Assembly: GCA_002269645.1 (NCBI GenBank)
Contig: NIVC01001641.1
Span: forward strand, 62,001-126,000
Direction: 5' to 3'
Source: Macrostomum lignano
Taxonomy: Eukaryota
Length of the DNA stretch: 64,000 nucleotides
Positions 1 through 60,491 of the stretch are shown one piece after another (within the stretch, counting starts at the first letter, position 1; the number at the start of each line of letters is the position of its first letter). The translations under genes and the position numbers were made by a program. The notes under the pieces are model-generated. The model did no database searches. It saw only the letters and a program-made list of their open reading frames with translations, and was not told where the DNA came from.

Positions 1-3247
<3,247 letters not shown>

Positions 3248-3399
3248 TGAGCAGGGGACTTCCCGCACCAGATTTTATTCAACAGTGTGTGTTTAGGAAG
3301 CAGTAGTCAATGCTGAGTTGTAGCATTGAGTGACTATTACTGATTGGAGAGTTGCATCAATGCAATTCAGATTAAGCGATTGATTAAATTTATCCTAAT

Positions 3400-3824
3400 A
3401 ATTCTAACTATTGGGGGTTTTGTTTTATAGACATTTGTCAGATCAATGTGTGTGCTATAGGAAGTCCTCTTGTCCCAACTGTGGCCAATTTGTTTTTTTG
3501 GCTCACTGGGAGAAAGAATTTTTGAATGCATTAAATTTTTTACTTACAAAAATATCAAGTTTACTGTTGATATTGGAAAGCATAAGAAGCTGGCTTTCTT
3601 GGATAATAAAGTTTACCCCAGTGGTGACTTGATTTCTACTAAAGTTTATTGCAAACCAAACTATATTGACCTTGAACAATAATGCTCTTTGTTCAAGGCA
3701 GTGAAAACTTGGTCTGATTAAATGCATGCTTCATTGGACTTTGGATTTTTATCATGAAGTTGAAATGCTCAGTCAAAAAAATTCTTTAATCCCTCTTTAA
3801 TTGTGTAAACTTATGTTAATGCTC
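3400..3824 (+). pseudogene. Decayed Penelope-like retroelement RT fragment
   Basis: Frameshifted pieces QINVCAIGSPLVPTVANL, FLAHWEKEFL, NIKFTVDIGKHKKLAFLD..VYCKP, KLGLIKCML and FYHEVEML. These follow the PLE RT order QxxGxxMGSPLxPxLAN / IKFT..LPFLD / VYRKP. Confidence 0.65.
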
Positions 3825-3851
3825 TATTAACATAAGAGCATTATGTTAATG

Positions 3852-6324: not shown

Positions 6325-7922
6325 AATGCTCGCATCCAATTAACTTAATATTTCAAATGCGTAAAGAATTTTTATATTCTGTATCTATGGGTTAATAACT
6401 GCATTAAACTATTTAAAGTGTACATGGGTGGGTGCCTTGTGATGTGTATACCACACAATTGTTGGATGTTATTGGAATATGCATTTTATTAGGATAATTA
6501 TAAGCATAACAGTGTCTTATAACTTAAGCATACATATTAGGAAACTTTAGTAACTACTATGCAGTGTGCAAGAGGAACAGTGAAAACTTATTCTAATATG
6601 TTTTACCAATTAGTTTGTCTGCAAAGCAGATCTTTGGTTCTATGCTTCCCTTCTTATTTTGCAACCTTAATATCAAAGTCAATAGTTGAGTCATTTTATT
6701 TGATGATACACTTACAACAGCAACAAGGAGGCCAGACAAATGATACCCTGCAGCTATGGACCAAGCTGGCTTAGACCATGGCCCCCATTGGCAGCAAAGC
6801 TAGCAAGTTATTTCTTGACTAGGCTGCATAGCTATATCATTCTAGCAGTAATAATTGTGGTCTACACTTGCATAGGGTGCCATTTTTTTATTCCCAGTCT
6901 AAGGCAATAGCACATGCCACTAGTAAGGTGATGGACAAGAAGAAAAATGCTGCAGGCAGCTACTCCTTGATTGGTGATATGGTGATACAAATAAGTAGAA
7001 CTAGTAAAGACTATAATACTTGTATATAGTATACAAGTTAGCATATAAGCAACTTTATTCTTAGCATAATTTTTTTATTAATATCAGCATAGAATAAAAA
7101 ACTAGAATTTTCATTCCATTGTATGCCTACCATGGTCTAGACTAGGGTTTGCACTGCAGTGCTGATAAATCCCTCTTCTCTTAACCAGCTTAGTAAATTA
7201 ACTGCACTTATAAACTATATTAACCTTTTTAATCATTGATCAATAAGCCTGCCTAGCATTAGCTTGAGTAATTTGCCAGGCAACTAATGACATAAAAATA
7301 CAAAATTTCTTGATTCCAAATAAGCTCTGAGAAATATCAGTCTATAATACATTAATTATAGTGGTAGTAGCACTATTATAATTATAGTAGGAATCAAAGT
7401 ATATACATATATATTGATTTGTGTTTAGACCAGAATGAACTATGTCAAACTTATAATTACTTGATTATGACTTGAACTACCTTCTCCCTGGAATTGAAGA
7501 CCTGGCAAATAGAATAACCCAATGGAATTAATGAGTTCTACACAAAAAATTAACTTGAATTGTGCAAACTCACATGTAGGAACTAGGTAACAATTCAAAA
7601 GTCTAAACTACCCCAATTTAGAATTTTGTCTCAAACTGCCCCCATCTTAGAGAGACCACTCCCTGCTAGTTTTCTATTAAAAAGGTCACCATTGAAACTA
7701 ATATAGTAATTACTTTATTATTTTAATATTAGAATAGAATCATGTACACATTTTTGAACAAAAAAAGTTCACTTAAAATGACCTATAGGAAGTTATCTAC
7801 ACCCAATGTGCAAGCATTCTTAGCAGTTATGCACTCTTTTATAAAAAATGAATCTCCTAAACCCAATATTTTCAAGCAAATTTGGCACAGTTTAGAAAAT
7901 GTACAAAAATGTACATTGTATA

Positions 7923-12780: not shown

Positions 12781-15379
12781 GAAATAACTGCAAGGACAGT
12801 GAAAATAAAATTAGTCATATTTTTCGATGGTACTGCACTATTTTTGTGAAGCACATTTTTTATTAACTTTTGTGTTTCTTCTACCAACTTTGGCAGTTTT
12901 ACAACTTTACAGCTAGTACTTTTTAAACTTTCTACTTATTCCAGACAAATATACCTATATTATTCAAGAATATTTTGCTCTGACGGCTTCTACATGCCCA
13001 ACAGCATATACATTGCTTTTTATCTGACATGATAAAGCTAGAAGTCACTAATCACAATTAAAAAATATTTTATGAAAAATAACAAGGACAAAATACTACT
13101 GAGGATAAAAATCAAATGATGGGAGCTCAAAGTGCAAATGCAAGTTCATGCAAACAGGTTATTTTTGTGATTTAATGATTTAAAGTTATTTATTGATTTA
13201 TAATGTAATTCAATACTGAATTTTAAATGCCTTAAAATGAATTTTCATTGATAAGCAGGATTTTGAGTGACTATAAAACTGTGAACCATTTTAGTTGTTT
13301 ATTTCAAATTGTACAAAAATTATCTCTTTAAAATGAAGCTACCTAAAAGCTGAGATAGTTCTTACATTTAAAAAAACTACATGTTTTAGCTGCTAAAATT
13401 GAGGATAGAAGAACAAAAAGTTATGCTTCTTTATAGAGATTTCTAACTTTATTTTTTAATTAATATTTGATATTATAATATTAAAGTTAATATCTTGCAA
13501 TTAATATTTTGCTAAAATATATATTAGTATAACTGTAAAACATAATTCGTGTTCAATGTGTCTTTTACTTTGAAAGTTTCAAGACAGAATTTAAAAGATA
13601 TATTATATAAAATATCTATTCTTTATAAATAGCAGGACACACAAGACAAGGACTAAACAGTAATTAGTAGTATAGTTGCACACCTATCGCTTAGATCCTT
13701 AATTATTTTGGTTATTAATACCCTTTAAATAGTAGAAATGAACAAAAGAAAGCTAATTTCGAGATTGAGGCAAAAACTGAGAATGCGCACTTCCATGTTG
13801 CTAGCCGCGTCTCAGCCGCATCAAAATTTTAAACTCATGCCCCAGATGCGGCTGTAGTAAAATCTTATAGATTATGGTCTGAAAGTTACGTCCCAAAAGA
13901 TTGCGCGCGATAATTCGATAGTTCATTTATGTACAAGTGAATGCGCACGCTTGTAAAATAAAAATGTATGAGCAGCGCGATAACATTCAAATATATTACT
14001 TCTCAGGCTGCGTTTTATTTATGTGTGTACAGAAGTTCAGCCTAATATTTTAACTTTAAACTTTGAAATTTATTTACAGTTAGCTAAGTTCAACAGTCAT
14101 TTTTTTTAACCTTTTTTGATCCGTACTTTGTTAAAGTGCAATGAATTCAAACGTCAGTTTAACTTGGAAGCGATCTTAACTCTCATTCCTAGATAAACCT
14201 TGAATATTCACAGTTTAACTTGGAATTTAACCAGGAATCGGCTTGAATTTTTTAAGCGGGTTCTTAAAGGAAAAATTAAAAAATTGTTGGTTGTTTTTTT
14301 ATTTTTAGTCTGGTTTATAAAATTGTTCTTACATTAGCAAAAAATTCTTTGAAACATTTCAAATAATACAAAGTTCTGTCTACGCAAAATAAAAGAAATT
14401 TGTTTTACTGCTTACGTGCTGGTACGAAACAAATATTGTTTCAAAGAAACAATTATTTTTGAAAATTACACCTTATCGAGAGACGAAAAAACGTTTGTCA
14501 TTGCTGACCAAAAAAGTTTATGCGGAGTATAATAAGTTAACAACCGATATTGATACTAAAAAGCTTATAGTATTTGTAGAACTACCTAAGTTTTTAACTT
14601 TAAGCAAAGAAGTTAAGCTCTTTTTTGCAGGCACAGACATACAATGCGTTGGTTTGTTTTCTTTGGATTTTTGCTTGTCTGGGTATCACTTTGTGTTTGT
14701 GTAGACAGAAGCAACTTTAAAACATGTGAACAATCTGGGTAAGTTAAATTGTGTTGTAAATAAACAAGTAAATATTTTGTTTAGAAGAGACCAGTAAATA
14801 ATCTTGCCTTAACGGCAGTGTTTATTCCCACGGTACTGTAGGAATAATTTCTGTCTTATTCCAACGGTACCGTGGGAATAATTTTCTGCTTATCCGCACG
14901 GCACAATGACGAGATAGCTGCCATATCTTCTACATATATATGCTGTACGTGAATAGTTTATAGCTTTTTGAAAGGGAATTTGAATGGAGGATACTAAGAA
15001 GCTGTTGATCTACAAGTAGATCAACACCACGACCAGCGTTTTTTGCATAAAAAGGCCATTAAATCTTTACTTCTATTAAACAAATTGTCAAGCAAAGTTA
15101 TGTTGTTATACTGCACTTAAACCGTAAATACTTAACTAAATTATTCCCATGGCATATGTAGAAGATGGGGCAGCTATCTCATTAGTATGCTGTGCCCTGG
15201 ATGGAATTCTTGCAGAAAAATCACAACGCGTTATGCACTTGCAAGAAAAAAATGCGATTTTGCGTCAAAAAATCCGAAAAAAATGCATTGCAGAATTTCA
15301 GACAAAATTGCTAATTCTTAATATATGCAAAAGTGCGCTTGAGATATTGCATTTTGTAAAAGATAATTCTACTAGCTAA

Positions 15380-15674
15380 CATACATGCGCAACAGTCGGC
15401 CGAGTCGGCCAATCCGGCCAACTGATTTGGCAGCCAACCATGGAAGTCGCAAAAATGCCCACCCAAAAAACACCAAGTAGTAGTACTAAGTAGCTGACGA
15501 GGCATTTTTGCCTGATAAGACAGTCATGGTTACTCCCGCCGTTTACCCAAAGTTGCGTTAATTTTGCTTTAGGTTTTTTTACATGTAAGTCGCATTTTTG
15601 GCCAAAAACTACGTCGCATTTTTGTTAAAACTAAGTCGCACGGCCGACCGAATTTTGGACGTTGCGCATGTATG
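15380..15674. mobile_element. hAT-type MITE, 295 bp
   Basis: Perfect 14-bp TIR catacatgcgcaac / gttgcgcatgtatg and perfect 8-bp TSD ctagctaa (15372-15379 and 15675-15682). Confidence 0.85.
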
Positions 15675-22780: not shown

Positions 22781-25700
22781 ATTCTGCAAGCGTCACCGGA
22801 AATTTGCAACTGCGCAAGATGCCGCAGAAGCCGAAGGCGCCAACCAGTACCAGGTGGACCCGGCGTCCATTGCAACCGATGACAACGGCCTGTCAGCTGC
22901 TCTGGTCGATGCAGCCACTGGCAAACGGTTGAGCCTTCGACTAGCTCGCGTGGCAACCGTTACTGGGCGAACTTTTCGTCTGAAAATCAACGAATTTGCC
23001 GACGAAGCCAAGAGGCCCAGGTTCGAACCCGCGCCAGGCGACTCGCTGGTTGCCGACGTGGCCGAGGCGCCCGTTGCCATTGACAACAAGCAGCTGGACG
23101 GCAATCTGTACGTGCTCGAAGCCAAGGATGGCGCCAAGAGCGACGCTGCAAAGGTGAGGCGTGTGCGCTTTATGAGCATAGTGCCATAATAATAATTGAT
23201 TACATCTGCCCCAGCTCGGTCAGATGTGCAACCAACAGTCTCAGCTATCAGCCTCCGCATCTGAAGGCTGCATACGGCTGTTCAGTCCAATTACTATCGG
23301 GGTGGGGGTCGCCACACATACCCTCAGTTACCCCAGCTAATACTTGGCACCCGTTTTACAGCTGGGGTGAACTGAAGCAATGCAGAGTTGAGTGTCTTGT
23401 TTAAGGATATAAATGTGTTCCAGTAGGGTCAGGAATCGAACCCCTGACCTTTAAGTCGTGAGTCCGACAAACTAAATCAATCTTAGTTTAAGCGTATCAT
23501 GTTGCAGAATTGCTTACTACTAAGTAAGTAGTGTATAGACGGGCTATTTTGATTGTTCGAATCCCGTCGACCCCCCCCCCTCACAGGCCAAAGCTGTTCT
23601 CCAGCTCAAACCGTTCCGAGTCGACTGCCTACTGAACGATCGCCCCCTGATCAGCGTGAACTCCAAGAGCCGCCTGATGTGGGAGTTCCATCAGCAGAAA
23701 CCCGACGACTCAGCCGACAATTCCGACGGTCTCTACGACGAAGAGTTCAAAGGCCACCGCGATGCCAAGCCGCACGGCTCCTCGTCTGTCGGCATGGACG
23801 TGGCTTTCCCGGGCTTCGAGCACGTGTACGGTATCCCGGAGCACGCGGACAGCCTGGCCCTGCGCAGCACAGCCGGCGGCGAGCCCTACCGGCTGTACAA
23901 CCTGGACGTGTTCGAGTACGAGCTCAACAACCCCATGGCTCTGTACGGCAGCGTGCCGCTGGTGTACGCGCACTCGGCTAACAACACGGCCGGGGCCTTC
24001 TGGCACAACCCGTCCGAGACCTGGGTTGACGTTCAATCGTCCAAGTCTAGCGGCGGCGGCCTGTCCGCTCTGCTGACCAGCTTCGTCAAGTCCGCCTCGC
24101 CGTCCGAGGCCCTGACCGAGACGCACTGGATGAGCGAGTCCGGCGTCATCGACCTGTTCCTGTTGCTAAGCGACACTCCGCTGGGCGCGTTCCGGCAGTA
24201 CGCCAGCCTGACTGGCACCACGCCGCTGCCGCCGATCTTCTCCATCGCTTATCACCAGTGCCGCTGGAATTATAACGATGAGACCGATGTGCTTGAGGTG
24301 AGGCTAATTGACGCACTTGGCGCCAGCACTTCATGTGTTGAACTGTTAGCGGTTCAGTTTAATCGATTTGTTAAAGAGATTTTGATATTTATATACCGTC
24401 GGGACTTTAAATAGACCACACTGATGCTGAATAAACCCGATTAGCGCCTTATCTATAGACCCCATTGACGCCTTATCTATAGACCCCATTGACGCCTTAT
24501 CTATAGACCCCATTGGCGCCTTATCCGACTATTTTTGGTACCTTATCTAAAGACTAAATTGACGCCTAATCTATAGACAATACTGATACCAAAACAGATT
24601 TACCTTCAGACAACAATCAATACCAATATCATGTCTGCCCCTATACCCTTTCCAGGTTGATCGCAATTTCGACGAAAATGACATCCCCTATGACGTCATC
24701 TGGCTAGACATCGAGCACACGGACGGGAAGCGCTATTTCACCTGGGACTCGAACAAGTTCCCCAATCCCCAAGGCATGCTGGACAAGCTCAACGCCAAGG
24801 GCCGTCAGCTGGTGACCGTGGTTGATCCGCATATTAAACGTGACGATAACTGGGCGCTGTACCAGCGGGTTCGCGACGGCGACATCGCCGTGAAGAGTCA
24901 CAAGGATGACGGACTGTACGATGGCTGGTGCTGGCCGGGCTCGTCTGTGTGGCCGGATTTCATTGACCCGGCAGTCAGGAAGTGAGTCAGTCTTTAGACA
25001 TTCTGAGTAATCCCCCCCCCCGAGCCCTTGCCCATCTGAGCAATACCCATTCAGGTTTTTGGCATTCTGAGTAATTCCCCCCGAGCCCTGTCCCATCTGA
25101 GAAATACCCATTCAGATTTTAGACATTCTGAGTAATTCCCCCGAGCCCTTGCCCATCTGAGAAATACCCATTCAGATTTTAGACATTCTGAGTAATTCCC
25201 CCCGAGCCCTTGCCCATCTGAGAAATACCCATTCAGCTTTTAGACATTCTGAGTAATTCCCCGTGAGCCCTTGCCCAACTGAGAAATACCCCTTGAGTAT
25301 ATAGACATTCTGAGAAACCCCCCCGAGCCCTTGCCCATCTGAGCAATACCCATTCAGCTTTTAGGCATTCTGAGTAATCCGCCCGAGCTTTTGCCCATCC
25401 GAGCAATACCCATTCACTTGCACTCGCTTCAACAACAGGTGGTGGGCCAACGAATTCAAGGACTACGTAGCCGCCTACACCTGGAACGACATGGGCGAGC
25501 CGTCCGTGTTCAACGGGCCTGAGGTGACGATGCACAAGGACGCCAAGCATCACAACGGCTGGGAGCACAGGGAGGTGCACAATCTGTACGGTGCGCTCGT
25601 CCACCAGGCCTCCTGGGACGGCCAGCTGGTCAAGTCGCCGCAGCGGCGGCCGTTCGTGCTGACCAGGGCGTTCTTTGCTGGCTCGCAGCGGACTGCGGCT

Positions 25701-30875: not shown

Positions 30876-32921
30876 ATGATGAACTCAACTGACGGCTCGT
30901 GCGAATCCAACAGCCGGTCCGCCCGCTGCCGCGGCTTCATCGATCAACTCGCTGAGCAGCGCTGGCTTCGCGGCTCGGCTTACCTGCTGCTGTACTTCCT
31001 GCTGTTCATGCCGTCTCTGGCCATGCTGTTCATGGCCATCGAGGGCCCGGTGGAAGAGCAGGAGAAGATCGCCCTGCGGCTGGCTAGGCTGGACTTCCTG
31101 GCTAATCACACCTGTCTGAGCGATGCCGAGCTAGAGCGCTTCCTGGCCATCGTGCTGGCGACTAACAATCGAGGCGTCTCCGCGCTGCGCAACGCCAGCC
31201 AGGGCCGCTCCAACTGGAGCTTCGGCCAGTCCCTGTTCTTCGCCACCACCGTGGTCACCACCATCGGCTACGGCCGCACCGCTCCGCTGTCCCATCTGGG
31301 CAAGGCCATGTGCATCGCTGTTGCTCTCATTGGCATCCCGCTCACCTTGCTGGCCTTCTCGCTCACCGCCGGCTGGCTCAGGCGCCTCTCGCTGCGGCTG
31401 CTGGTCTGGCTGAGGAACTGGTTCCCGCCCGATAGACAGGTGAGAGTCTGCAGCTCCCTGATCAGTCCCTGAATATGCCTCTCCGCTCCCTGATCAGTCC
31501 CTGAGTCTGCCTCTCCGCTCCCTGATCAGTCCCTGAGTCTGCCTCTCCGCTCCCTGATCAGTCCCTGAGTCTGCCTCTCCGCTCCCTGATCCGTCCCTGA
31601 GTCTGCAGCTCCCTGATCAGTCCCTGAGTCTGCCTCTCCACTCCCTGATCAGTCCCTGAGTCTGCCTCTCCGCTTCCTGATCAGTCCCTGAGTCTGCCTC
31701 TCCGCTCCCTGATCCGTCCCTGAGTCTGCCTCTCCGCTCCCTGATCCGTCCCTGAGTCTGCCTCTCCGCTCCCTGATCCGTCCCTGAGTCTGCAGCTCCC
31801 TGATCAGTCCCTGAGTCTGCCTCTCCGCTCCCTGATCAGTCCCTGAGTCTGCCTCTCCGCTCCCTGATCAGTCCCTGAGTCTGCCTCTCCGCTCCCTGAT
31901 CAGTCCCTGAGTCTGCCTCTCCGCTCCCTGATCCGTCCCTGAGTCTGCAGCTCCCTGATCAGTCCCTGAGTCTGCCTCTCCGCTCCCTGATCAGTCCCTG
32001 AGTCTGCCTCTCCGCTTCCTGATCAGTCCCTGAGTCTGCAGCTCCGCTCCCTGATCAGTCCCTGAGTCTGCCTCTCCGCTCCCTGATCCGTCCCTGAGTC
32101 TGCCTCTCCGCTCCCTGATCCGTCCCTGAGTCTGCAGCTCCCTGATCAGTCCCTGAGTCTGCCTCTCCGCTCCCTGATCAGTCCCTGAGTCTTCAGCTCC
32201 GCTCCCAGAGCAGTCCCTGAGTCTGCAGCTCCGCTCCCTGATCAGTCCCTGAGTCTGCAGCTCCGCTCCCTGATCAGTCCCTGAGTCTACCTCTCCGCTC
32301 CCTGATCAGTCCCTGAATCTTCCATGGACAACTAAAGTCCTCCATTCCAACCCATGAGTCTACTTTAGTTGTCTATGGGCTCAGTTTTCATGTGGGCAAA
32401 ATTCAGCCCGTGGATCATGACTAAATTCCCGCCTGCAGTCTCGTGCCGCCCTGCTCCACCTGTGCCTGATTTTCACCTGCCTGCTCGTCTGCTTCCTGCT
32501 GATCCCTGCCGCCGCATTCGCCCAATTGGAGCGGGACTGGACCTACCTGGACGCATTCTACTACTGCGTGATCTCGCTGACCACCGTCGGCCTGGGCGAC
32601 TTCATCGTTGGCGAGCACCCTGACCAGGAGAACCGCCTGCTGTACAAAATATTCGCGGTCGTTTACCTGTACGTCGGCCTCATCTTCCTGGTGTTTGCGT
32701 TGCGCAGCTTCGCCGACCTGCCCGACCTGAATCCGGGCCGGTTCATCTACTCCGAAGACCTGGACGCCCTTATTGACAGCGACCGGTACGATGTCTCCAC
32801 GGGGTGCAGCGGCGGTGGCAGCGAGGAAGCCAAACTGCTGTCGCCGTCGAGCCTGGGTTCAGCAACGGCATCTGGCGGCAGCGTCGGACCGCGCGGCTAC
32901 GACTCGACAGGGGTCAAATAA
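30876..32921 (+). CDS. KCNK1: Two-pore-domain potassium channel, TWIK-like (KCNK1/6 group)
   Basis: Exons 30876-31439 and 32439-32921 (phase 0). P1 is FFATTVVTTIGYG and P2 is YYCVISLTTVGLGD; four TM segments and a cap Cys. The GYG+GLG filter pair is typical of TWIK. The symbol is family-level. Confidence 0.88.
31445..32320. repeat. 32-bp intronic minisatellite
   Basis: Unit ctgagtctgcctctccgctccctgatcagtcc, beginning at the splice donor. Confidence 0.95.
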
Positions 32922-38320: not shown

Positions 38321-38560
38321 GGTGCAAAAGGTCTGATGTTTCAGTCTTTTTCAGGATTTCATGCCTCCAAAAATTGTATAAATTTCCAATTTGAGTGTTC
38401 GCAAGTTTAGTGGAAAGAGGATTACTGAGTTGAAGTTTTTGGAGTCTTTCACAGATTATAAAATTTCATAATTTGCTAGATGAAATCCTTGGCTGGCGTC
38501 AGTAATTTCTGCCGCGTCACACCTGCAAATTGCTGCACCTCTATTCGAGCACTACTAATC

Positions 38561-40541
38561 ATGCTCAGCATTCAGCGTGCCGTGCCGCTCCGAGGTGCCA
38601 AGGCGGCGGCCCTCTGCCGACGGCGGCTTTCCAGCTACGTTCAGGGCCAGAGCTCCGAGAGGGGCGTTCGGGAGTACTTTTACTTTATCGACCATCAGGG
38701 CCAGCTGTTCCTGGACGATGCGCGGATGAAGAATTTCACCTCTTGTTTCAAAGGTTTTTCATGCTCGATCGCATTGCCTATATGGGGGGGGGCAGAGCAG
38801 CTTAGAGTCAAATGCGCATCCGATTCTTGCGCCATGTGACCTCTGGTTCGATTCCGTGTGCAGTGACATTCATTTGTTGGAACAAATTGTCGTGTTCAAA
38901 AGAAACAAGCAGAACTTCAATTCAAACACTTTAAGAGATCTCAGCGCTTGCGGAAATTCGGTTCAAACAAAGTCCCTTTCTATTGAAACAGAAGTTCAAT
39001 TCAAACTGTCTGTAGCAAAAATTGTTCCTGAGTGACCCGCATGAGCAGCTTGGAAATTCAAAAGAAACAAAGTTACATTCTACAAAGTATTTCGACATAG
39101 ATTCTTAAAAGTTAATCTATTTTTTGTTTTCAATTTCACTGTGCTACATAACTGTACAATTGTTGCACACTAAGAATTGCCGTGAGTGTTGAATATGATT
39201 GAAATTGTTGGAAGAGGACGGAATCGATAAAGTTAATTGAAGCAGAATTCGAGGAAGAGGTCGTGAAACACCAGCCTCTGCAGTACGCTTTTCTAGCCAA
39301 CAGTGATAGAGACCGTATCATCAAGGCTGCTGATCGTAGGGATGACTGTGAAACTGGCGCGCCAAATTGGAGTCAAGAGGTCAACAGCGAACATACGTCT
39401 CTCGCTGCCTTGGTGGACAGGCAATTGATGGTTAGGAGGCTCAAGTTGACCAACTGACATTGACTCGTTCCGGTTCGACATTTTACTCTTATGTTCATCG
39501 ATATGTTGTGTTTTATCTCTTTGACGAAATAGAATGTAACTTTGTTTCTTTTGAATTTCCAATCTGCTCATGCGGGTCACTCAGGAACAATTTTTGCCAC
39601 AAGACAGTTTGAATTGAACTTCTTCTGTTTCAATAGAAAGGGACTTTGTTTGAATTGAATTTCCGCAAGCGCTGAGATTTCTTAGTGTTTAAATGCATTT
39701 ATTCAGAGCTTCTCTCACTTGAAGGATTCAAACGCTTGCTGCCTTGACTCAGTTTTTACCATAGACAGCCAGTAGAGAGGCTCTGAATGCATGTATTTTT
39801 TTCTATTTTGGATTCAATTGCTTGCTCGTAGGCTCAGCTAGTGTGAGAAATGCCATATTATTTTTTACGCATCAGTTTACCTCCGCTAATCCTTTCTCTA
39901 AGAGTAATCAAAGTGACTACTAAGATTTTAATTCATGCTCTAAGAGTTCATCCCACTGTCTAATGAGGTTGTCGCCCAAATCCAGGTGACCTCATGCAGT
40001 AGTTACTGGGTGGCTCCCCACCCGTCCCACAGAGCACAAATTCTTGGCCTTCTTCTTCTCCCGCCTGCGCGCGAACAACACGGACCGGTACAGGGACCAG
40101 TTCCCCTGGCTGTCCCCGTGCGGCCCGGAGCGGAACTACGTCCGCTGCGACGACCAGCCGATTGTGTTCACTCGTCTCCATGACAACCCGGACAATCCGG
40201 ACGAGTGCTGGCTGTTGTACAATCACTGCGGTGACAAGCTGAAGGTGCCGTTCCAGCCTGGCGGGGTGTGCATGCACCCGAGCAGCGGCCGGGTGTACCA
40301 CCCAGCAGGTGACCGGCACGGCGGCGTCGGCCTGATCCGCTCCCAGCTCGCCATCCAGCTGGCAACTAACTTTGTGTGGCGAGGCAGCGACTCTTCGTCG
40401 AACTCGTCGAGCTTGACCAGTCCGACTCATTTTGTTTGGCGGGGAGTTGAGCACGAGATCAATTCGGATTTGTTGAAGATTCTCGATACCAGAGAGCCGA
40501 GGTTTAGGGGGCTGTTTGTTGGAGTTGACAGCGAGGATTAG
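38561..40541 (+). CDS. C8orf82: UPF0598 protein C8orf82 homolog, putatively mitochondrial
   Basis: Exons 38561-38753 and 40033-40541 (phase 1). REYFYFIDHQGQLFLDDARMKNFTSCFK|EHKFLAFFFSRLR..CGPERNYVRCDDQPIVFT; Arg/Ala-rich presequence-like N-terminus. Confidence 0.9.
38923..39691. mobile_element. Foldback/long-TIR element in the C8orf82 intron
   Basis: ~38923-39085 is the reverse complement of ~39530-39691 (e.g. ttgttcctgagtgacccgcatgagcag vs ctgctcatgcgggtcactcaggaacaa). Confidence 0.8.
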
Positions 40542-41799
40542 TGCGGATCGCTGCAATTTTAAAGTTCGCGGGGAGTCGCCAGAATTGACTCTGAAATATT
40601 CGATTTCGTAAATCGGTTAACCTGTTCTCAAAAAGGCACGGTTTTTGGCATCCGCGCCACGCGCGCCACGACCCCTGATTTGATTCCGTGCGTAGCCTCA
40701 AATTCATTTAAGGTTAGGGTGCAAAAAAAATTTGCTGGGGAGGTGTGCGATTCACACACACCCATGATGGCCAAGGCACAGAGAGTCAGGGCCAAACACC
40801 CTCTTTTTGGCGTCTTAAAACCAAGTATAGGGCTCCTTAGTCAAGTTATAAGAGATGCAGGTGTAAGACTAACACCCTCTCAAGCGATAAAATTTACTTA
40901 GGTGGACATGGCCCCCTGTCCCCAAACCTTTGGCGACGCCACTACTGAACTTAGTTTGTTCGTTCATTTTTGTGATTGTAACATTGCATCGACATTTATA
41001 ATTTTATATGACTATTTGAATCCAGCACCTTCCGTGCACTTTTCTGCAACTTGTCTATATTTAAAATATACGCATTCACTCATTCATTCGTAAAGTTCCC
41101 ACGGTTTGAATTCAGAAAATTCTGTGCTTCGTCATTTACTCTTATTGCTTCAGCATTTCCTTCATACCTCATTAGTGCATGCAGCTCTTTGATCGCTTAG
41201 TGTGCTATCAAATTCACAACACAAGTGCAGTGCAGTCCATTATCAACGATCGGTCAAAGTGCGAGTGTAACAAAACGCAAAAAATGATACGTATTTTTAA
41301 CGTTTCTATAACTCTCGTTTTGTAGCACTGGCCGTCACCTGTCACACCTTTAATTATTTTGCTTTGCAGTGCAGTCTGGAGTTAAAACCCGTGCACACAA
41401 TGTACACCAGATATTCTGATTTAGTGTGGGCGTTCAGTCAGTGTACATTAGGTTTGACTTTTCCCGGCCCAGGCACGCTTAATCACGTGCTTCTGGCGTG
41501 ATTGTCACTGTACGCATTCTGGCAAGAGCGAGGGAACCCCACCAAGGACGATGTTGCTATTTTTAGCTTTCTGTCCAGCTATTTGGACGTGGAGTCGAAC
41601 AGACCTACATTTCTGTGTCCGAACAAACTGCGCACGTTTTCGTATGCGCAACGTTATTGAAGAACCCTTCTCTCGGTCTTTGCTTACAGAGTTTAATTGC
41701 GCTCCGGTGTGGACTTCATGGAGTCCAAAGATCTATAAATTTTGTGACTGCGTTGCAAGCGACACGCAAGGCTCTCAGCGCAACAGAGGCGAATAATAC

Positions 41800-41900: not shown

Positions 41901-41999
41901 CTGCTCAGCGATAGGATCTCAGAAGGCGCTGTTCTCAACCTGTCTGTCAGCTTTCTGCACTGGAAATTTCGCTCTCTGTACTGGGAATCAACCTGAGAG

Positions 42000-44900
42000 A
42001 TGCAGATGCTTCAGAGTAAGTTGTTTTTCTTGTCTGTTTAACTTGTAGTTGTCTGTCTTTCTTCTAAGACCTAGGCTACAAAGATTGTAGGCTTATTAGT
42101 TATAACAAGGAAGGATTCGAAGGTGCAGGCTTAATGCTTTTCCAATGAGGTCACGTGACTGAGTTAAAATCCTGAAGACGTTAAATTTCAAGGTATATAA
42201 CTTGAGAAAAACGGACTTAACAACTTGTCGCAATATCTTAAGTCAAGGATATACGTTTTAAAAACTAAAAAAACTTTTGACATTAATCAAAATTATTAAT
42301 GGTATAGTAATTATTTCCACGAAACCGTTTCTTAAAAGTAAGATGCATGTCATTTTACTTATGCAGTGCAAAGTCGCGTCAAATTATCTTTATTAACTTT
42401 TTTATCTCTTCACATGCTATAAATGTATTTCGAGTCCACGGCATAAATTAGGTGAAAATTACTCGGGGGCTCACTGCTCGTTATCAGAAGAATACTGATA
42501 AAATTGAGTCTACTTCAATTAGCCTGAACTTGAAGTGTCTCAAGCTTCTCGTCAGGTGTGCTATATATTGATATCTTATCTCCTTGGCTAATTAGGTAAC
42601 TTTATAATCTTCTCGCTGATTGCTTAGAACTCGCCGCTCAGCTGACTCGCAGCCTCAGCCCGGGCGGCCTTTCAACTTGCCGCCATCTCAGCGGCGGCGT
42701 CGGGCTGCCGAAGTCAGGCGGCGGCGACGGCGTTGGCGTTGACGACGGCGGCATATCGAAAGAGTTCGGCAAAAATGACCACCCAGTCATCAAAGAAGGC
42801 AATGGCGGCAGATCAAACGGCAAGTTGGGGACGTTCTCCGGCCTGACGCCCGACTTTCCCTGCATTGTCGGCAATCCGTCCAGCGGGCCGGAGCCAACCT
42901 ACGCCAGCGTGCCGAAGAACAGCTACCGCCTGTTTGAGTACCCGGACACCTTCTGCCTGGAGCTCAACTCTGGCCGCCTGCCCGGCTTCAAATTGGCCTA
43001 CGAGACCTGGGGCAGCCTCAACCCGGACGCCAGCAACGCCATCCTGCTGTGCACCGGCCTGTCAGCTTCTTCGCACGCTCGCAGCCACCCGCTGAACCCG
43101 GCCAAAGGCTGGTGGGAGTCCTTCATCGGGCCCGGCTGCGCCCTGGACACCGACAAGTTCTTCATCATCTGCGCCAACCTGCTCGGCAGCTGCTTCGGCA
43201 GCTCTGGTCCGTCAAGCGTCAACCCGGAGACCGGGGATCCCTACGCTACGACGTTTCCAGTTGTGTCAGTCACCGACCTGGTGCGCTCGCAGTTCCTGCT
43301 GCTTGACCAGCTGGGCATTCAACGGCTGCACGCCGCCGTCGGCTCGTCCCTGGGCGGCATGCTGTCTCTGGCCTCGGCCGTGGAATTTCCCGACCGGGTG
43401 AATCGGTGAGAGTTCGATAAAAGTCCACTGAGATCTTGGTCTGGGGCCATGAAGCCAGCTTTGGTCGAGTCCAGGTGTGGTTAAATTTACAGTTTAGACG
43501 TGCACTTTTGCTGGTCCGGCTAAGCCGCTTGCTTGCAGTTTGCTTGCACGGCAATTGCGACAACAATATCAAAATTGGCACGCCTTGCGATAAGAGACTC
43601 TCGGGGGGGGGGAGGGGGGGTGGGGCTCTGCTAATACGTTTACTGACGTTTGAAGGGCCGAATGGGCAGATTTCTGTCTCTGCAGGCTGTAAGACGGGAG
43701 ATAAACCATGGAAGGCGTTGCACCCCAGGGCTCCTACAATCACCTCAACGTGATTGACTTTATCATGCTCGTAAAGTTGAGACTCGGGATCGACCTCGTT
43801 ACAGGGAACTTATGTGTCTCGGCCCCCTTATCGATAGATTTCTACCGCTTTTGTACATGTGCCTATAATCCAAGGTGTGCTGCGCTTCTTACTTAGTAGG
43901 TCGAGGCTTTTAGTTGGGTATTTAAGTAGTTAGTTAGTTGGTTATCGTAGTTAGGGCGCTCTGATGTGCCAGCAGTCCAGGCTCGATTTCAAGTGCAGTC
44001 ACGTTAATTTTGAGCTAAATTGAAATCTCGGCTTGGCTCTGCTCGTGCAATTAACGCCTTTGATGGCCAACCACCAAGGCACAGTGAAGTGTACATGCCT
44101 AATGATAAATAAATCTGATATGCATGACTGCGTACGTATCCGCGCGCTTGTGTGCCTGCTCAGGGGAGTCGGCGGAATTAGTCAGTCAGTTAGTCAGTCA
44201 GTCAGTCGATCCCCCAGCCAGCGAGCGAGTAATTAGTGATGTCCTTTCCACTGATTAACTGAACTAAAAGTACAGATTCATGACCTTTCTCGTTATCTGA
44301 CCTGCATGTTAAACCATCGTTGGGATCAAACCTCAGGCGGGATCGAACCCCAGACAGTTCAACAGACTCCGGAAGCATCCAGAAGATCGTCAGTCCACCC
44401 CGCTCCTCATCCGCAGCCTCATCTCGATCTCGTCGGCCAGCTACAGCCATCCGACCTCCATCGCGATGCGCTACCTGCAGCGCAAGGCCATCATGACCGA
44501 CCCGCACTGGCGCAGCGGCCGCTACTACGGCTCCGACTACCCCAAGACCGGCATGAAGCTGGCCAGGGAGATCGCCACCCTCACCTACCGCAGCGGCCCT
44601 GAGTGGGAGACCCGGTTTGGCCGGCGCCGGCTGAACCCAGCCGCTCCGCAGGCTGTCAGCCTCTGCCCGACGTTCGTCATCGAGCAGTACCTGGACTACC
44701 AGGTAAGGCTCTGGTCGGGTTTCGGGTCTGGGATATTAGAAAAAATTTTTTTAGGATTTTATGAGAGATGCGTGTGTATTGGGCTGTGTGCACCCTGCCG
44801 CACTTTTAAGCGACGTTGTCACGCAACCGGCGAGAGGCATTATTTACTACCCATTCCGCCGACTCCCCTGAGCAGGCACACAAGCACGCGGATACGTACG

Positions 44901-46116
44901 CAGTCATACGCACAGGCACACACTCACACAAGAGTGTACAGCGAGCGGCCCAAACTTTATTTATCGTTAGGCATGTACACTTCACTGTGCCTTGGGGGTT
45001 GGTCCTCAAGGGCGTTAATTGCACGAGCAGAGCCAAGCCGAGATTTCAATTTGGACTCAAATTAAAGTCAACTCCAAAAACTTGAGTCAATTTCTCCAAT
45101 GAAATGTACACTCAGCAATATTTTGAAGTTTCCACACAGAAAACAGTGGTCAACAAGTGGCAGCTCTTTACCATGTTGCTAAGTGTATTTAAGGCTGTCT
45201 CGAATATTTTTGATGCAAGGTCTCAGGGGGTTCCTAAGAGGAAAGGCGACAGTAAGGAAGGGCGACAGTAAGTAAGGGCGACAGTAAGTAAGGGCGACAG
45301 TAAGTAAGGGCGACAGTAAGTAAGGGCGACAGTAAGTAAGGGCGACAGTAAGGAAAGGCGACAGTCAGGAAAAGGCGACAGTCAGGAAAAGGCGACAGTC
45401 AGGAAAAGGCGACAGTCAGGAAAAGGCAACAGTCAGTATGGAAAGGCGACAGTAAGGAAAGGCGACAGTAAGTAAAGGTGACAGTCAGTAAGGAAAGGCG
45501 ACAGTCAGGAAAGGCGACAGTAAGGAAAGGCGACAGTAAGGAAAGGCGACAGTAAGGAAAGGCGACAGTAAGTAAAGGCGACAGTCAGTAAGGAAAGGCG
45601 ACAGTAAGGAAAGGCGACAGTAAGGAAAGGCGACAGTAAGGAAAGGCGACAGTAAGGAAAGGCGACAGTAAGGAAAGGCGACAGTAAGTAAAGGCGACAG
45701 TCAGTAAGGAAAGGCGACAGTAAGGAAAGGCGACAGTAAGGAAAGGCGACAGTCAGAAAGGAAAGGCGACGGTAAGGCGAAGGCGAACCTGAAACCCCCC
45801 CTTCCAGGGCGAGGCCAGCTCCGTGCGTCTGGACCCCAACAGCCTGCTGTACCTGAGCAAGGCCATGGACCTGTTCGACGCCGAGGACCAGCTGGACAGA
45901 GTCATCTGCCCGGCTATGATTCTGGGCGTGCAGTCTGACATCCTGTTCCCCGTGGAGCAGCAGCGCCAGCTCGCCCAGCGTCTGCGCGACATCGGCCGCT
46001 GCCGGCGGGTCACCTACTTCGAGCTGACCTCGCTGTACGGCCACGACACCTTCCTGCTGGACGTGCACAACGTGGGCACGGCGGTGAAGGGCTTCCTGGA
46101 GACCGAGCACGCGTAA
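42000..46116 (+). CDS. cys2: MetX/Met2-fold serine O-acyl(succinyl)transferase, fungal Cys2-like, with mitochondrial-type presequence
   Basis: Exons 42000-42015, 42628-43405, 44417-44702, 45808-46116, all in phase. Motifs LLCTGLSASSHA, GWWESFIGPG..LDTDKFFIICAN.LGSCFGSSGPSS, nucleophile GSSLGGM, YRSGPEW, GVQSDILFP (Asp) and YGHDTFLL (His). Confidence 0.88.
43930..44180 (+). mobile_element. tRNA-derived SINE family B, partial copy
   Basis: Shares ggctcgat..aagtgc..gtcac.ttaat..gagctaaattg.aatctcggcttggctct..ccaaggcacagtgaagtgtacatgcct with the 57088-57440 copy. Confidence 0.8.
44778..45065 (-). mobile_element. SINE family B copy lacking the 5' head
   Basis: Reverse complement of the 57088-57440 copy from the body through the 3' tail. 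Confidence 0.82.
45240..45785. repeat. 16-20-bp purine-rich minisatellite ending at a splice acceptor
   Basis: Unit aaggaaaggcgacagt, with cagtaagt/cagtaagg variants. Confidence 0.93.
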
Positions 46117-46289
46117 CCATGCAGTTCTCTCCGGCTGGAGCTCGCGTTCAGCGAATTCTGACTTGCTGTTTTCAGCTTGCCAAGTGGTAGCTAAATTGTT
46201 CCTGTCTGCTTTTGCTGCTCTGCTGTCTTATCTAAGCTCACTGTTTGACGCCAGCACGCACCTGCTTCTCTTCCGGTCTCTGATCATCT

Positions 46290-46870
46290 CTTCTCTCTTC
46301 TTTGCTCTCCCATCTCCACTCTCCCATCTCCCCTCTCCCATCTCCCATCTCCCCTTTCATCTCTCCCCTCTCTCCTCTCCCCTCTCCTCTCTCCTCTCTC
46401 ACATCTCCCTTCTTCTCTCTCCTCTCTCCCGTCTTCCCTTTCCCCTCTCCTTTCTCCTCTCTCCCATCTCCTCTCTCCCATCTCTTCTCTCCCCTCTCCT
46501 CTCTCCCCTCTCCTCTCTCCCATCTCCTCTCTCCCATCTCCTCTCTCCCGTCTCCTCTCCCTCTCTTCTCTTCCCTCTTCCCTCTTCTCTCTTCCTCTCT
46601 TCTCTCTTCTCTCCTCTCTCCCCTCTCCTTTCTTCTCTTTTCTCTCTTCTCCTCTCTTCTCTCTCCTCTCTCCTCTCTTCTCTCTTCTCCTCTCTTCTCT
46701 CTCCTGTAGCCTCGCCTCTCTCCTCTCTCCCATCTTTCTTCTCCTCTCTCCCATCTCATCTCTCTCCTCTCTCGCCTCCTCTTTATTCTCTCCTCTCTCC
46801 CCTCTCCTCTCTCCCCTCTCCTCTCTCCCGTCTTCCCTCTCCTCTGTCCCCTCTGCTCTCCCATCTCTCT
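46290..46870. repeat. CT-rich low-complexity tract
   Basis: (ctctc/ctcct)n. Confidence 0.9.
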
Positions 46871-47444
46871 TATTTAAATGGACTTCTCATATTTATTTTC
46901 TGTGTATTTAATAATGAACGGATATTTTGACATAAAATTTATGAACCAAGAACCTTAGTCTGGCAGATTCAATTTTTTTATCCCTTATTTACTATCAAGA
47001 GTACTTTGTGTTTTTCACGTCAGCTGTACATTCATTGCAAACCATACTGAAACCGTGACTATTTCTTAAATCTATGCTTCAATTTGTTTATTAAATACTC
47101 GTAGATCGTGTCAAAAACATGCCAGACTCCTCCTTCATCATACTGTTTTTGAAAAACAACTGCTTCGATATTGTAGGAGATACATGTATTTTCAGATAAT
47201 AATTTTTTGTTTTGCAATAAAATTTCATTTTCATTCATCAATTCTTAAATTCTAAAGTACATTTGCCTAGCAAACGCCCACAAAGTAACTAAGATGTGGT
47301 TGTCTGTCCTGAGCTGAATTCCAGAGTCAAACCTTGAGTAGTCATAAAGCTTTTAACTTATTTAAAAAGACATCGGACGCCAGAAGCGCTTTTGAGTCTG
47401 AAAATATGATTTTTACAATTTTTAAACTATGAAGGTCGCCTCTT

Positions 47445-47910
47445 CGCACTCCCCTCCGCTCTCTTCTCACTCCCCTCCGCTCTCTTCTCACTCCCCTCCG
47501 CTCTCTTCTCACTCCCCTACGCTCTCTTCTCACTCCCCTCCGCTCTCTTCTCACTCCCCTACGCTCTCTTCTCCTCACTCCTCTCAGCTCTCTTCTCACT
47601 CTCCTCCGCTCTCTTCTCACTCCCCTCCGCTCTCTTCTCACTCCCCTCCGCTCTCTTCTCACTCCCCTCCGCTCTCTTCTCACTCCCCTACGCTCTCTTC
47701 TCCTCACTCCTCTCAGCTCTCTTCTCACTTTCCTCCGCTCTTTTCTCACTCTCCTCCGCTCTCTTCTCACTCCCCTCCGCTCTCTTCTCACTCCCCTCCG
47801 CTCTCTTCTCACTCCCCTCCGCTCTCTTCTCACTCCCTTCCGCTCTCTTCTCACTCCCTTCCGCTCTCTTCTCACTCCCTTCCGCTCTCTTCTCACCCCT
47901 CCATTCTCTT
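47445..47910. repeat. 21-bp CT-rich minisatellite
   Basis: Unit ctcccctccgctctcttctca. Confidence 0.92.
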
Positions 47911-48654
47911 CTATCTCGTCTCCGCCAATATTTGCCAAATCTGTTTTTAAAAGTCTCGACTGTACTTTGCGCATTTTGAGACGTCTGTCGCCCGCTACCT
48001 CTCAGTATGCTTCAAGCTTCAACCTGACACTCTGTAGAAGTTCTGCAGCTGCATTGGGCAGTAAAAACCACCAGCAGTTCAGCGCTAAACTCAGTCTCGA
48101 GCCGCGACGGCCGTGGTTCGATTCCTCGGGCGGCCACATTCATTTGGGGTTTGTGTGCACAAAATTTTGGCCAAGAGTTGCCGGGTGATTAACACATATA
48201 AAGCTAACCTTTCAAGGCACAAAGGGTGTACATTGAAGGGTTGTATTTCTCTTCTGCCCGCAGATGCCCGCAGCCCGCATGCGAATATTTGTTCATATTT
48301 TATGTATTATAGGCTGCTGCGTAAAACTGGCAATAATAAATTTGTCAAACTCGTCGATCAAAACAGATCGAGTGCTACATTTTGAATGCCTGTCATTTTA
48401 ATTTGCAATTGGCGCGCTTATTTGCCAAGCATAAATCTCAGATTTGTACTTTGTCGGATTCAATTCATCCTTCATAATGGTTTTAAAATCGGAAAATATT
48501 CTAGTAAAAGAATCTACCTGGACATCTATGTGGGTGCCTGTGAGAGTGTGAGTTTTACAATTGAAACCAAAGAGAAACCAAGGTAATTCTATTTAATCTA
48601 ACTTTCTAACCCAGCCCCGCTACTCTTCAATTGGTCCCTTTTAACCAAAATAGT

Positions 48655-60491
<11,837 letters not shown>

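What the first reader, a model, noticed from the sequence alone, without database searches (positions are those of the whole stretch)
42000..46116. Fungal Cys2-type serine O-acyltransferase in an animal genome (alternative cysteine biosynthesis)
Seen: an intact four-exon gene with a complete Ser-Asp-His triad and an N-terminal mitochondrial-type presequence built from a 16-nt micro-exon. The oxyanion turn reads TGLSA and the nucleophile loop reads GSSLGG. Established: homoserine acetyltransferases typically have HALxG there, whereas TGLS(A/P) marks serine-acylating members (fungal Cys2, DcsE). A Cys2 plus O-succinylserine sulfhydrylase route has been reported in corals and some other invertebrates, but not in vertebrates. 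Inference: this animal may make cysteine from serine and sulfide rather than only by trans-sulfuration. Canonical introns and host-like repeats argue against bacterial contamination.
Basis: partly seen in the sequence, partly recalled or inferred. Interest (0 to 1): 0.78.

Follow-up and report, generated by a model that had tools for sequence, protein, structure and literature searches.

The report
Flatworm copy of animal Cys2 enzyme
The gene is real: it is the flatworm Macrostomum lignano's own copy of Cys2, a serine-activating enzyme already known since 2022 to give many invertebrates a second route to cysteine, so this is a sound but ordinary finding.

Summary
Window 42000-46116 (+) carries an intact four-exon gene with GT-AG introns. 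Its 462-aa product is identical to GenBank PAA65537.1, a "hypothetical protein" of the flatworm Macrostomum lignano.

It is a MetX-family alpha/beta-hydrolase acyltransferase:
- The catalytic triad is Ser246/Asp404/His439.
- It has every published marker of serine O-succinyltransferases: G149-L150-S151-A152, S246-L247, R283 and D440.
- It falls inside the eukaryotic MetX-G3c (Cys2) clade with 99% bootstrap support, among bilaterian animals.
- Its closest solved structure is the serine-acetylating enzyme DcsE.

The gene is native, not contamination or recent transfer:
- Two of its three introns share position and phase with Nematostella.
- Codon usage matches the neighbouring host genes.
- The genome holds three syntenic copies under purifying selection (9 synonymous vs 2 nonsynonymous changes).

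Salazar et al. 2022 showed the Cys2/Cys1a pathway across animals other than vertebrates, arthropods and nematodes. Their sequence tables contain no flatworm, so this adds a phylum-level data point.

Three things remain unverified:
- whether M. lignano has the Cys1a sulfhydrylase partner (my search was uninformative);
- whether the acyl donor is succinyl- or acetyl-CoA;
- whether the N-terminus targets mitochondria.

The "16-nt micro-exon" is only the coding tail of exon 1.

The parts
42000..42015 (+). Coding end of exon 1 (ATG CAG ATG CTT CAG A). The start codon is at 42000. The two other genomic copies lack the first ATGCAG and start at the second ATG.
   Evidence: in-frame TGA at 41994-41996
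42016..42627 (+). Intron 1 (GTAAGT...TTAG), phase 1, 34% GC
42628..43405 (+). Exon 2. It encodes the low-complexity, presequence-like N-terminal extension (to about residue 100) and the first half of the catalytic domain. This includes T148-G-L-S-A152 (43053-43067) and the nucleophile elbow G244-S-S246-L-G-G249 (43341-43358).
43406..44416 (+). Intron 2 (GTGAGA...CGCAG), phase 2 inside the Arg265 codon. Its position and phase are shared with Nematostella and Owenia Cys2 genes. It contains the left arm of an inverted repeat (44001-44178).
44417..44702 (+). Exon 3 (286 nt), encoding the lid region including Arg283 (44469-44471), the residue matching Frateuria SST Arg183
44703..45807 (+). Intron 3 (GTAAGG...TCCAG), phase 0 between Q360 and G361. 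Its position and phase are shared with Nematostella. It holds the right arm of the inverted repeat (44853-45068) and a 16-nt tandem array (45239-45786).
45808..46116 (+). Exon 4, with catalytic Asp404 (45937-45939), His439-Asp440 (46042-46047) and the TAA stop (46114-46116)
38537..40541 (+). Upstream DUF4505 gene (Mlig006020g3). It carries the same transcriptional-unit name as the Cys2 gene, and older automatic models fused the two.

Best explanation
The locus is the native Macrostomum lignano orthologue of Cys2, the eukaryotic MetX-G3c L-serine O-succinyltransferase.

**Inferred mechanism.** The enzyme is an alpha/beta-hydrolase-fold acyltransferase working by a ping-pong mechanism. Ser246, activated by His439 and Asp404, is acylated by the CoA thioester, most likely succinyl-CoA. 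The acyl group then passes to the hydroxyl of L-serine, giving O-succinyl-L-serine. The G149-L-S-A152 turn and Arg283 narrow the acceptor pocket for serine rather than homoserine.

A PLP-dependent Cys1a-type sulfhydrylase would then replace the succinate with sulfide (or a persulfide) to make cysteine. This route is independent of trans-sulfuration.

The roughly 100-residue disordered, basic, acid-poor N-terminus probably targets the enzyme to mitochondria, where succinyl-CoA is made.

**Shown here:** gene structure, orthology, marker residues, fold, native origin and purifying selection.

**Inferred only:** substrate and acyl-donor specificity, cellular localisation, presence of the partner enzyme, and flux to cysteine.
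For: - **Exact match to an annotated gene.** The model is identical to the annotated M. lignano protein. That annotation is built from RNA-seq transcripts.
- **Family scans.** Pfam Abhydrolase_1 scores 2e-28. NCBIfam places it in the MetX family.
- **Solved structures.** The best PDB sequence hit is DcsE 3vvl at 3e-87. The AlphaFold model has pLDDT above 90 for 243 residues and matches 3vvl with target-normalised TM 0.89 at 42% identity.
- **Marker residues.** All markers listed by Salazar 2022 are present: GLSA, S-L, R283 and D440. HAT and HST enzymes read H-A-L-x-G at the turn and N/D at the Arg283 position.
- **Phylogeny.** In an NJ tree (363 columns, 200 bootstraps), MetX-G3c including this protein gets 99% support, G3a+DcsE 98.5% and G1+G2 93.5%.
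- **Identity.** It is 59-66% identical to animal Cys2 proteins and 54-57% to S. pombe Cys2 and A. nidulans CysA. It is 42-45% identical to bacterial SSTs and DcsE, and 35-40% to HAT/HST enzymes.
- **Shared introns.** Intron 2 (phase 2, Arg265) is shared with Nematostella and Owenia. Intron 3 (phase 0) is shared with Nematostella.
- **Selection.** Three syntenic intact copies exist. The window copy and L003 differ by 9 synonymous and 2 nonsynonymous changes (pN/pS 0.07, binomial P = 1e-4). The catalytic domain has no nonsynonymous change.
- **Codon usage.** GC3 is 0.87, against 0.79-0.80 in the neighbouring host genes.
- **Functional precedent.** Acropora Acys2, a member of the same clade, complements S. 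pombe cys2-delta.
Against: - No biochemical or genetic data exist for this protein.
- No M. lignano Cys1a appeared among the best 120 hits of a Lingula Cys1a search. One search shows that M. lignano ranks only 58th-95th of 120 from any orthologue's viewpoint, so this absence carries little weight.
- NCBIfam's equivalog model PRK00175 (homoserine O-acetyltransferase) scores above its cut-off, 386.6 against 331.
- DcsE, which also has the Arg, was described with acetyl-CoA. A. nidulans CysA was first described as an acetyltransferase. The acyl donor is therefore not settled by sequence.
- The N-terminus has only 3 basic residues in its first 30.
- The protein's 90% cluster contains only NCBI and UniRef records and no independent transcriptome-assembly record.
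Confidence: 0.82

Rival explanations
1. Same enzyme family and acceptor (serine), but the physiological donor is acetyl-CoA. The enzyme would then be a serine O-acetyltransferase like DcsE, or like CysA as first described, and would feed an O-acetylserine sulfhydrylase.
For: The closest solved structure is DcsE, deposited as an L-serine O-acetyltransferase. NCBI names some animal orthologues "serine O-acetyltransferase-like". S. pombe cysteine synthase accepts both O-acetylserine and O-succinylserine according to PMC8577491.
Against: According to Salazar 2022, Cys2-type enzymes are primarily succinyltransferases. This protein is in the G3c clade, not the DcsE/G3a clade. It keeps Arg283 and S-L, which are listed among the SST markers.
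Confidence: 0.1
2. It is a homoserine O-acetyltransferase (Met2/MetX type) acting in methionine metabolism, as profile-based annotation would name it.
For: NCBIfam PRK00175 scores 386.6 bits, above its cut-off of 331. Several orthologues are named homoserine O-acetyltransferase in databases.
Against: - TIGR01392 scores 346.6, below its cut-off of 500.
- The turn reads T-G-L-S-A, not H-A-L-x-G, and Arg283 replaces the N/D of HAT and HST enzymes.
- It is separated from G1+G2 in the tree and only 35-40% identical to them.
Confidence: 0.03
3. The enzyme is a genuine Cys2 orthologue, but M. lignano lacks Cys1a. The O-acylserine would then serve another purpose. It might feed cystathionine beta-synthase or another PLP enzyme, or act in sulfide detoxification rather than net cysteine synthesis.
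For: No M. lignano Cys1a is among the 120 best hits to Lingula Cys1a. No other flatworm appears among the 120 best hits to the M. lignano Cys2, which hints at pathway erosion in the phylum.
Against: The absence is uninformative given M. lignano's long branch; the rotifer Cys1a known from Salazar's table is also missing from that list. Cys2 and Cys1a co-occur in the other animal lineages sampled. Strong purifying selection on three copies fits an intact pathway.
Confidence: 0.05
4. The gene is bacterial or fungal contamination, or a recent horizontal transfer.
For: MetX enzymes are mainly microbial. The exons are GC-rich relative to the introns.
Against: - Three spliceosomal introns are present, two at positions and phases shared with a cnidarian.
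- The nearest relatives are animals, at 56-64% identity.
- The gene lies on a 202-kb contig between animal genes: DUF4505, a furin-like convertase and a K+ channel.
- The same synteny holds on two further contigs.
- GC3 matches the neighbours.
Confidence: 0.005

Closest known systems
Acropora loripes Acys2 and the animal MetX-G3c subgroup (Salazar et al. 2022, Sci Adv, PMC9506716)
   Same: - Same clade (99% bootstrap).
- 62% identity to Acys2 over the aligned core.
- Same GLSA / S-L / Arg / H-D markers.
- Same basic N-terminal extension of about 70-110 residues ahead of a conserved GPEP motif.
- Shared intron positions with cnidarian genes.
   Different: - It comes from a flatworm. Platyhelminthes are absent from that paper's text and sequence tables.
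- It has only 3 introns, against many in Nematostella and Owenia.
- It is present in three near-identical copies because of the polyploid DV1 genome.
- It lacks the COBRA1/NELF-B neighbour seen in Owenia and Nematostella.
- It has not been tested functionally.
Schizosaccharomyces pombe Cys2 (Q10341) and Aspergillus nidulans CysA
   Same: Same MetX-G3c group, 54-57% identity and identical marker residues H/C-T-G-L-S-A-S and V-G-S-S-L/M-G-G. Loss of Cys2 causes cysteine auxotrophy in S. pombe.
   Different: The fungal proteins carry a long C-terminal insertion or extension (504-517 aa) that this 462-aa protein lacks. The animal protein groups with the animal sequences, not within the fungi.
DcsE, L-serine O-acetyltransferase of D-cycloserine biosynthesis (PDB 3VVL), and bacterial MetX-G3a SSTs (Xanthomonas, Frateuria)
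   Same: Closest solved structure (E = 3e-87, 42-44% identity, target-normalised TM 0.89). Same T-G-L-S turn, and Arg at the Frateuria-183 position.
   Different: They form a separate clade (G3a+DcsE, 98.5% bootstrap). They have Pro rather than Ala after the GLS turn, no N-terminal extension, and are bacterial.
MetX/Met2 homoserine O-acetyl- and O-succinyltransferases (MetX-G1/G2; e.g. H. influenzae 2B61)
   Same: Same fold, same Ser-Asp-His triad and the same ping-pong acyl-enzyme chemistry.
   Different: Their turn is H-A-L-x-G, they have N/D instead of Arg283, they are 35-40% identical, and they form a different clade.

Membership tests
MetX-G3c / Cys2-type L-serine O-succinyltransferase | MetX-type alpha/beta-hydrolase fold with a lid domain | tested here: met
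   Pfam PF00561 at 2e-28. MetX-family NCBIfam hits. AlphaFold model with pTM 0.78 matching DcsE at target-normalised TM 0.89.
MetX-G3c / Cys2-type L-serine O-succinyltransferase | Ser-Asp-His catalytic triad | tested here: met
   Ser246, Asp404 and His439 align with H. influenzae S143/D304/H337. They are invariant across 30 orthologues.
MetX-G3c / Cys2-type L-serine O-succinyltransferase | Gly-Leu-Ser-Ala/Pro turn (X. campestris positions 52-55) | tested here: met
   G149-L150-S151-A152; the criterion is from PMC9506716.
MetX-G3c / Cys2-type L-serine O-succinyltransferase | Ser-Leu/Met at X. campestris 149-150, Arg at Frateuria 183, and Asp at X. campestris 360 | tested here: met
   S246-L247, R283 and D440.
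MetX-G3c / Cys2-type L-serine O-succinyltransferase | Phylogenetic placement inside MetX-G3c with S. pombe Cys2 and Acropora Acys2 | tested here: met
   NJ tree with 200 bootstraps gives the clade 99% support. This is a distance method only; no ML tree was run.
MetX-G3c / Cys2-type L-serine O-succinyltransferase | Activity: serine strongly preferred over homoserine, succinyl-CoA as donor, and rescue of S. pombe cys2-delta | not testable with these tools
   Needs enzyme assays and yeast complementation.
O-succinylserine pathway (Cys2 + Cys1a) | A Cys1a-type O-succinylserine sulfhydrylase encoded in the same genome | tested here: inconclusive
   The Lingula Cys1a search listed 120 animal and protist orthologues but none from M. 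lignano. No tool here searches a eukaryotic genome directly.
MetX-G1 homoserine O-acetyltransferase (MetX/Met2) | H-A-L-x-G turn and G1 placement; score above the cut-off of the strict equivalog model | tested here: not met
   The turn is T-G-L-S-A and the protein lies outside G1+G2 (93.5% bootstrap). TIGR01392 scores 346.6, below 500. The looser PRK00175 model does pass, 386.6 against 331.
MetX-G3a bacterial SST / DcsE | Placement in the G3a clade; G-L-S-Pro turn | tested here: not met
   G3a+DcsE forms its own clade (98.5% bootstrap) that excludes this protein. This protein has Ala152, not Pro.

The most novel reading that the evidence does not exclude
Macrostomum, an early-branching free-living flatworm of sulfidic intertidal sand, may be the only sequenced flatworm lineage that keeps Cys2. 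It may express Cys2 from a polycistronic, trans-spliced transcriptional unit together with an upstream DUF4505 gene. If the genome lacks Cys1a, the enzyme would have a role other than the published pathway, for example supplying O-acylserine to cystathionine beta-synthase or serving sulfide handling.
Probability: 0.08. Interest if true: 0.5.

Novelty: new member of a known kind. Interest (0 to 1): 0.2.

Why it matters
- It adds Platyhelminthes to the animal lineages that carry the Cys2 step of the alternative, serine-plus-sulfide route to cysteine.
- It corrects a "hypothetical protein" annotation.
- It shows by shared introns that the gene is ancestral in animals, not acquired.
- M. lignano has working transgenesis and RNAi, so it could be a convenient bilaterian in which to test the pathway in vivo: localisation, flux from sulfide, and dispensability against trans-sulfuration.
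- It does not change the current picture of animal sulfur metabolism.

Tried and rejected
1. **Search for the Cys1a partner.** I ran the search for homologous proteins with Lingula Cys1a. No M. lignano hit was in the 120 rows.
   - I followed up the divergent unnamed hits P0220 and P0243. Their loci L004 and L005 are 37-39% GC, intronless, and share no sequence with the window.
   - I also followed up P0190 (Logan SRR25726911, locus L006), a transcript whose coding sequence looks much less GC-rich by eye than M. lignano genes.
   - None of these is Macrostomum.
   - An amino-acid composition screen (GARP/FYMINK ratio) for GC-rich orthologues found no candidate.
   - A rank simulation with the Cys2 set showed that no available query would reliably bring M. 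lignano into a top-120 list. I therefore did not spend the third search.
2. **Literature and supplements.** No paper combines Macrostomum with cysteine synthase. Salazar's supplements contain no Platyhelminthes. Wudarski's held supplements do not list the gene.
3. **Spliced-leader start codon.** I asked whether the leader's terminal ATG (sequence from PMC8629364) could start translation at the exon-2 acceptor. It cannot: ATG|AACTCGCCGCTCAGCTGA hits a stop, so an upstream cis exon is needed. The older fused DUF4505-Cys2 models use a donor near 41652 and the same acceptor. I treat them as prediction artefacts or read-through of the precursor.
4. **Technical failure.** A Biopython bootstrap timed out and was replaced by a numpy NJ implementation.
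5. **Contamination or HGT.** Rejected on the intron and synteny evidence.
Full report
**Observation.** Joining 42000-42015, 42628-43405, 44417-44702 and 45808-46116 through three GT-AG introns gives a 1389-nt ORF of 462 codons. An in-frame TGA lies two codons upstream of the ATG.

The translation is 100% identical over its full length to GenBank PAA65537.1, "hypothetical protein BOX15_Mlig006020g4" of Macrostomum lignano. That protein is encoded on contig NIVC01001641.1 of assembly GCA_002269645.1. The window is therefore flatworm DNA. The GenBank annotation derives from genome-guided RNA-seq assembly (StringTie/TACO/TBONE/TransDecoder; PMC5730564). The exon junctions thus have transcript support, although I could not inspect reads.

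**What the protein is.**
- Pfam finds an alpha/beta-hydrolase fold (PF00561, 2e-28).
- NCBIfam places it in the MetX family. The loose equivalog PRK00175 "homoserine O-acetyltransferase" passes its cut-off (386.6 against 331). The strict TIGR01392 does not (346.6 against 500).
- The best solved-structure relative by sequence is 3VVL (E = 3e-87). This is DcsE, the L-serine O-acetyltransferase of D-cycloserine biosynthesis.
- An AlphaFold model built on 30 orthologues has pTM 0.78, with 243 residues at pLDDT 90 or higher. It also matches 3VVL best, with target-normalised TM 0.89 and 42% identity.

**Marker residues.** Salazar et al. 2022 (PMC9506716) list the residues that mark serine O-succinyltransferases within MetX. 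They are Gly-Leu-Ser-Ala/Pro at X. campestris 52-55, Ser-Leu/Met at 149-150, Arg183 (Frateuria numbering) and Asp360.

I aligned the flatworm protein with labelled references copied from that paper's Data S3, with DcsE, and with 23 orthologues. The flatworm protein has G149-L150-S151-A152, S246-L247, R283 and H439-D440. MetX-G1 and G2 homoserine acyltransferases read H-A-L-x-G at the turn and N/D at the Arg position. The catalytic triad is Ser246/Asp404/His439, mapped from H. influenzae S143/D304/H337.

**Phylogeny.** I built a neighbour-joining tree on 363 trimmed columns with 200 bootstraps.
- The eukaryotic MetX-G3c (Cys2) group including the flatworm protein gets 99% support.
- G3a+DcsE gets 98.5%, and G1+G2 gets 93.5%.
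- The flatworm sequence nests among bilaterians.
- It is 59-66% identical to animal orthologues and 54-57% to S. pombe Cys2 and A. nidulans CysA.
- It is 42-45% identical to bacterial SSTs and DcsE, and 35-40% to HAT and HST enzymes.

The 120 best database hits are animals (molluscs, annelids, a nemertean, a bryozoan, a brachiopod, echinoderms, hemichordates, amphioxus, tunicates, cnidarians, a tardigrade, a rotifer, placozoans, sponges), then unicellular relatives of animals and early-branching fungi. There are no vertebrates, arthropods or nematodes, and no other flatworm. Many hits are already named "serine O-succinyltransferase-like" by NCBI.

**Native gene, not contamination or transfer.**
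- Intron 2 splits the Arg265 codon after its second base. Nematostella and Owenia have an intron at the same position and phase.
- Intron 3 lies between Q360 and G361 in phase 0, exactly as in Nematostella.
- The CDS has GC3 of 0.87, like the neighbouring host genes at 0.79-0.80, while the introns are 34-49% GC.
- The gene lies between a DUF4505 gene and a furin-like proprotein convertase. A K+ channel gene, a GH31 glycosidase gene and a retrotransposon reverse-transcriptase ORF lie further out.
- The same DUF4505-Cys2-convertase arrangement appears on contig NIVC01001573. Cys2 and the convertase are also adjacent on NIVC01001037, where no DUF4505 gene was called in the stretch fetched. This fits the known partial genome duplication of the DV1 line.
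- All three copies are intact, with the same splice sites.
- The window copy and the most divergent copy differ by 9 synonymous and 2 nonsynonymous substitutions plus one in-frame 6-bp indel. All protein changes lie in the N-terminal extension. pN/pS is 0.07, and the probability of two or fewer nonsynonymous changes out of 11 under neutrality is 1e-4.

**The 5' end.** In the two other copies it is 10 nt, because the window copy carries an extra ATGCAG, giving MQ-MLQK... instead of MLQK.... Exon 2 has no in-frame ATG in the N-terminal region, so the start must come from upstream. The M. lignano spliced leader ends in ATG (PMC8629364). Joined directly to the exon-2 acceptor, it would read into a stop, so the cis exon is needed.

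The gene shares its transcriptional-unit prefix (Mlig006020) with the upstream DUF4505 gene, and older models fuse the two. With the naming scheme, this suggests both are cut from one precursor transcript. That is an inference.

**N-terminal extension.** The first roughly 100 residues are predicted to be mostly disordered; pLDDT is below 50 for residues 1-72 and 91-97. The first 30 residues have 3 basic, 0 acidic and 6 Ser/Thr residues. Most animal orthologues carry comparable basic, acid-poor extensions. This fits a mitochondrial presequence, and it fits the mitochondrial source of succinyl-CoA, but it is untested.

**Mechanism.** By homology, the enzyme should run a ping-pong acyl transfer. 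Ser246 is acylated by succinyl-CoA, and the acyl group then passes to L-serine to give O-succinylserine. A Cys1a sulfhydrylase would convert that to cysteine.

The same-clade Acropora enzyme rescues S. pombe cys2-delta, and Cys2 enzymes are reported to be almost 300-fold more efficient with serine than with homoserine. Whether the donor is succinyl- or acetyl-CoA cannot be read from the sequence with confidence.

**The partner.** I searched with Lingula Cys1a. The 120 listed hits cover most animal phyla but not M. lignano. A control using the Cys2 set shows that M. lignano ranks only 58th-95th of 120 from the viewpoint of any other orthologue. The known rotifer Cys1a is also missing from the list. 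The absence is therefore uninformative. Follow-ups on unnamed divergent hits showed they are not Macrostomum. No tool here searches a eukaryotic genome, so the partner remains untested.

**Novelty.** The pathway and its wide distribution in animals were published in 2022. That paper says both genes occur across all animal phyla except vertebrates, arthropods and nematodes. However, neither its text nor its sequence tables contain any flatworm. I also found no paper linking Macrostomum or flatworms to this pathway. The finding is a correct functional annotation of a "hypothetical protein" and a new phylum-level member of a known family. It is not a new kind of system.

**Verdict.** Novelty is low and interest is about 0.2.

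Noticed in passing
window 44001-44178 and 44853-45068: An inverted repeat (arms 90-98% complementary) sits in introns 2 and 3 and brackets exon 3, which is 286 nt and not a multiple of 3. It is conserved in all three genomic copies. A further copy (86-91% identity) lies at window 57166-57357, so it is a dispersed short element. Such flanking inverted repeats can promote exon skipping or back-splicing.
   Followed up: partly
window 45239-45786: A 16-nt tandem array (AGGAAAGGCGACAGTA, about 33 copies, with a 100-nt higher-order period) fills the 3' part of intron 3. It ends 21 nt before the exon-4 acceptor. Intron 3 is 1105, 1020 and 2605 nt in the three copies.
   Followed up: partly
window 46287-46869 and 47440-47912: A 583-bp (TCTCCTC)n microsatellite starts about 170 nt after the stop codon. 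A 21-nt tandem array of about 22 copies follows. Both are typical of the repeat-rich M. lignano genome and produce spurious long ORFs on both strands.
   Followed up: no
window 38537-40541 (+): An upstream DUF4505 (PF14956) gene shares the transcriptional-unit name Mlig006020 with the Cys2 gene. Older UniProt models (825 and 715 aa) fuse the two through a donor near 41652. They may be a polycistronic, trans-spliced gene pair.
   Followed up: partly
window 42000-42005: The window copy has a 6-bp duplication (ATGCAG) at the start codon that the two other genomic copies lack. It adds Met-Gln to the N-terminus.
   Followed up: yes
window 48655-56116 and beyond (-): A furin-like proprotein convertase gene (S8 pro-domain, Peptidase_S8, P-domain) lies tail-to-tail downstream of Cys2. 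The same neighbour is present at the two other copies.
   Followed up: no
window 3854-6277 (+); 23656-24414 (+); 32000-32921 (+): Three other features: an 807-aa ORF with a reverse-transcriptase domain (retrotransposon); an exon of a GH31 glycosidase gene; and the end of a two-pore-domain K+ channel gene (Ion_trans_2).
   Followed up: no
L007 (Owenia) 1-526 and L008 (Nematostella) 2511-7213: In both the annelid and the cnidarian, the Cys2 gene lies next to COBRA1/NELF-B. This looks like conserved microsynteny, and M. lignano lacks it.
   Followed up: partly
L008 (Nematostella) 14949-15460: A 29-bp tandem repeat reiterates the end of a Cys2 exon together with its 5' splice site (…TATCCAGACAGGGTAAACcg|gtaagc…) about 18 times. 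This creates a ladder of potential donor sites.
   Followed up: no
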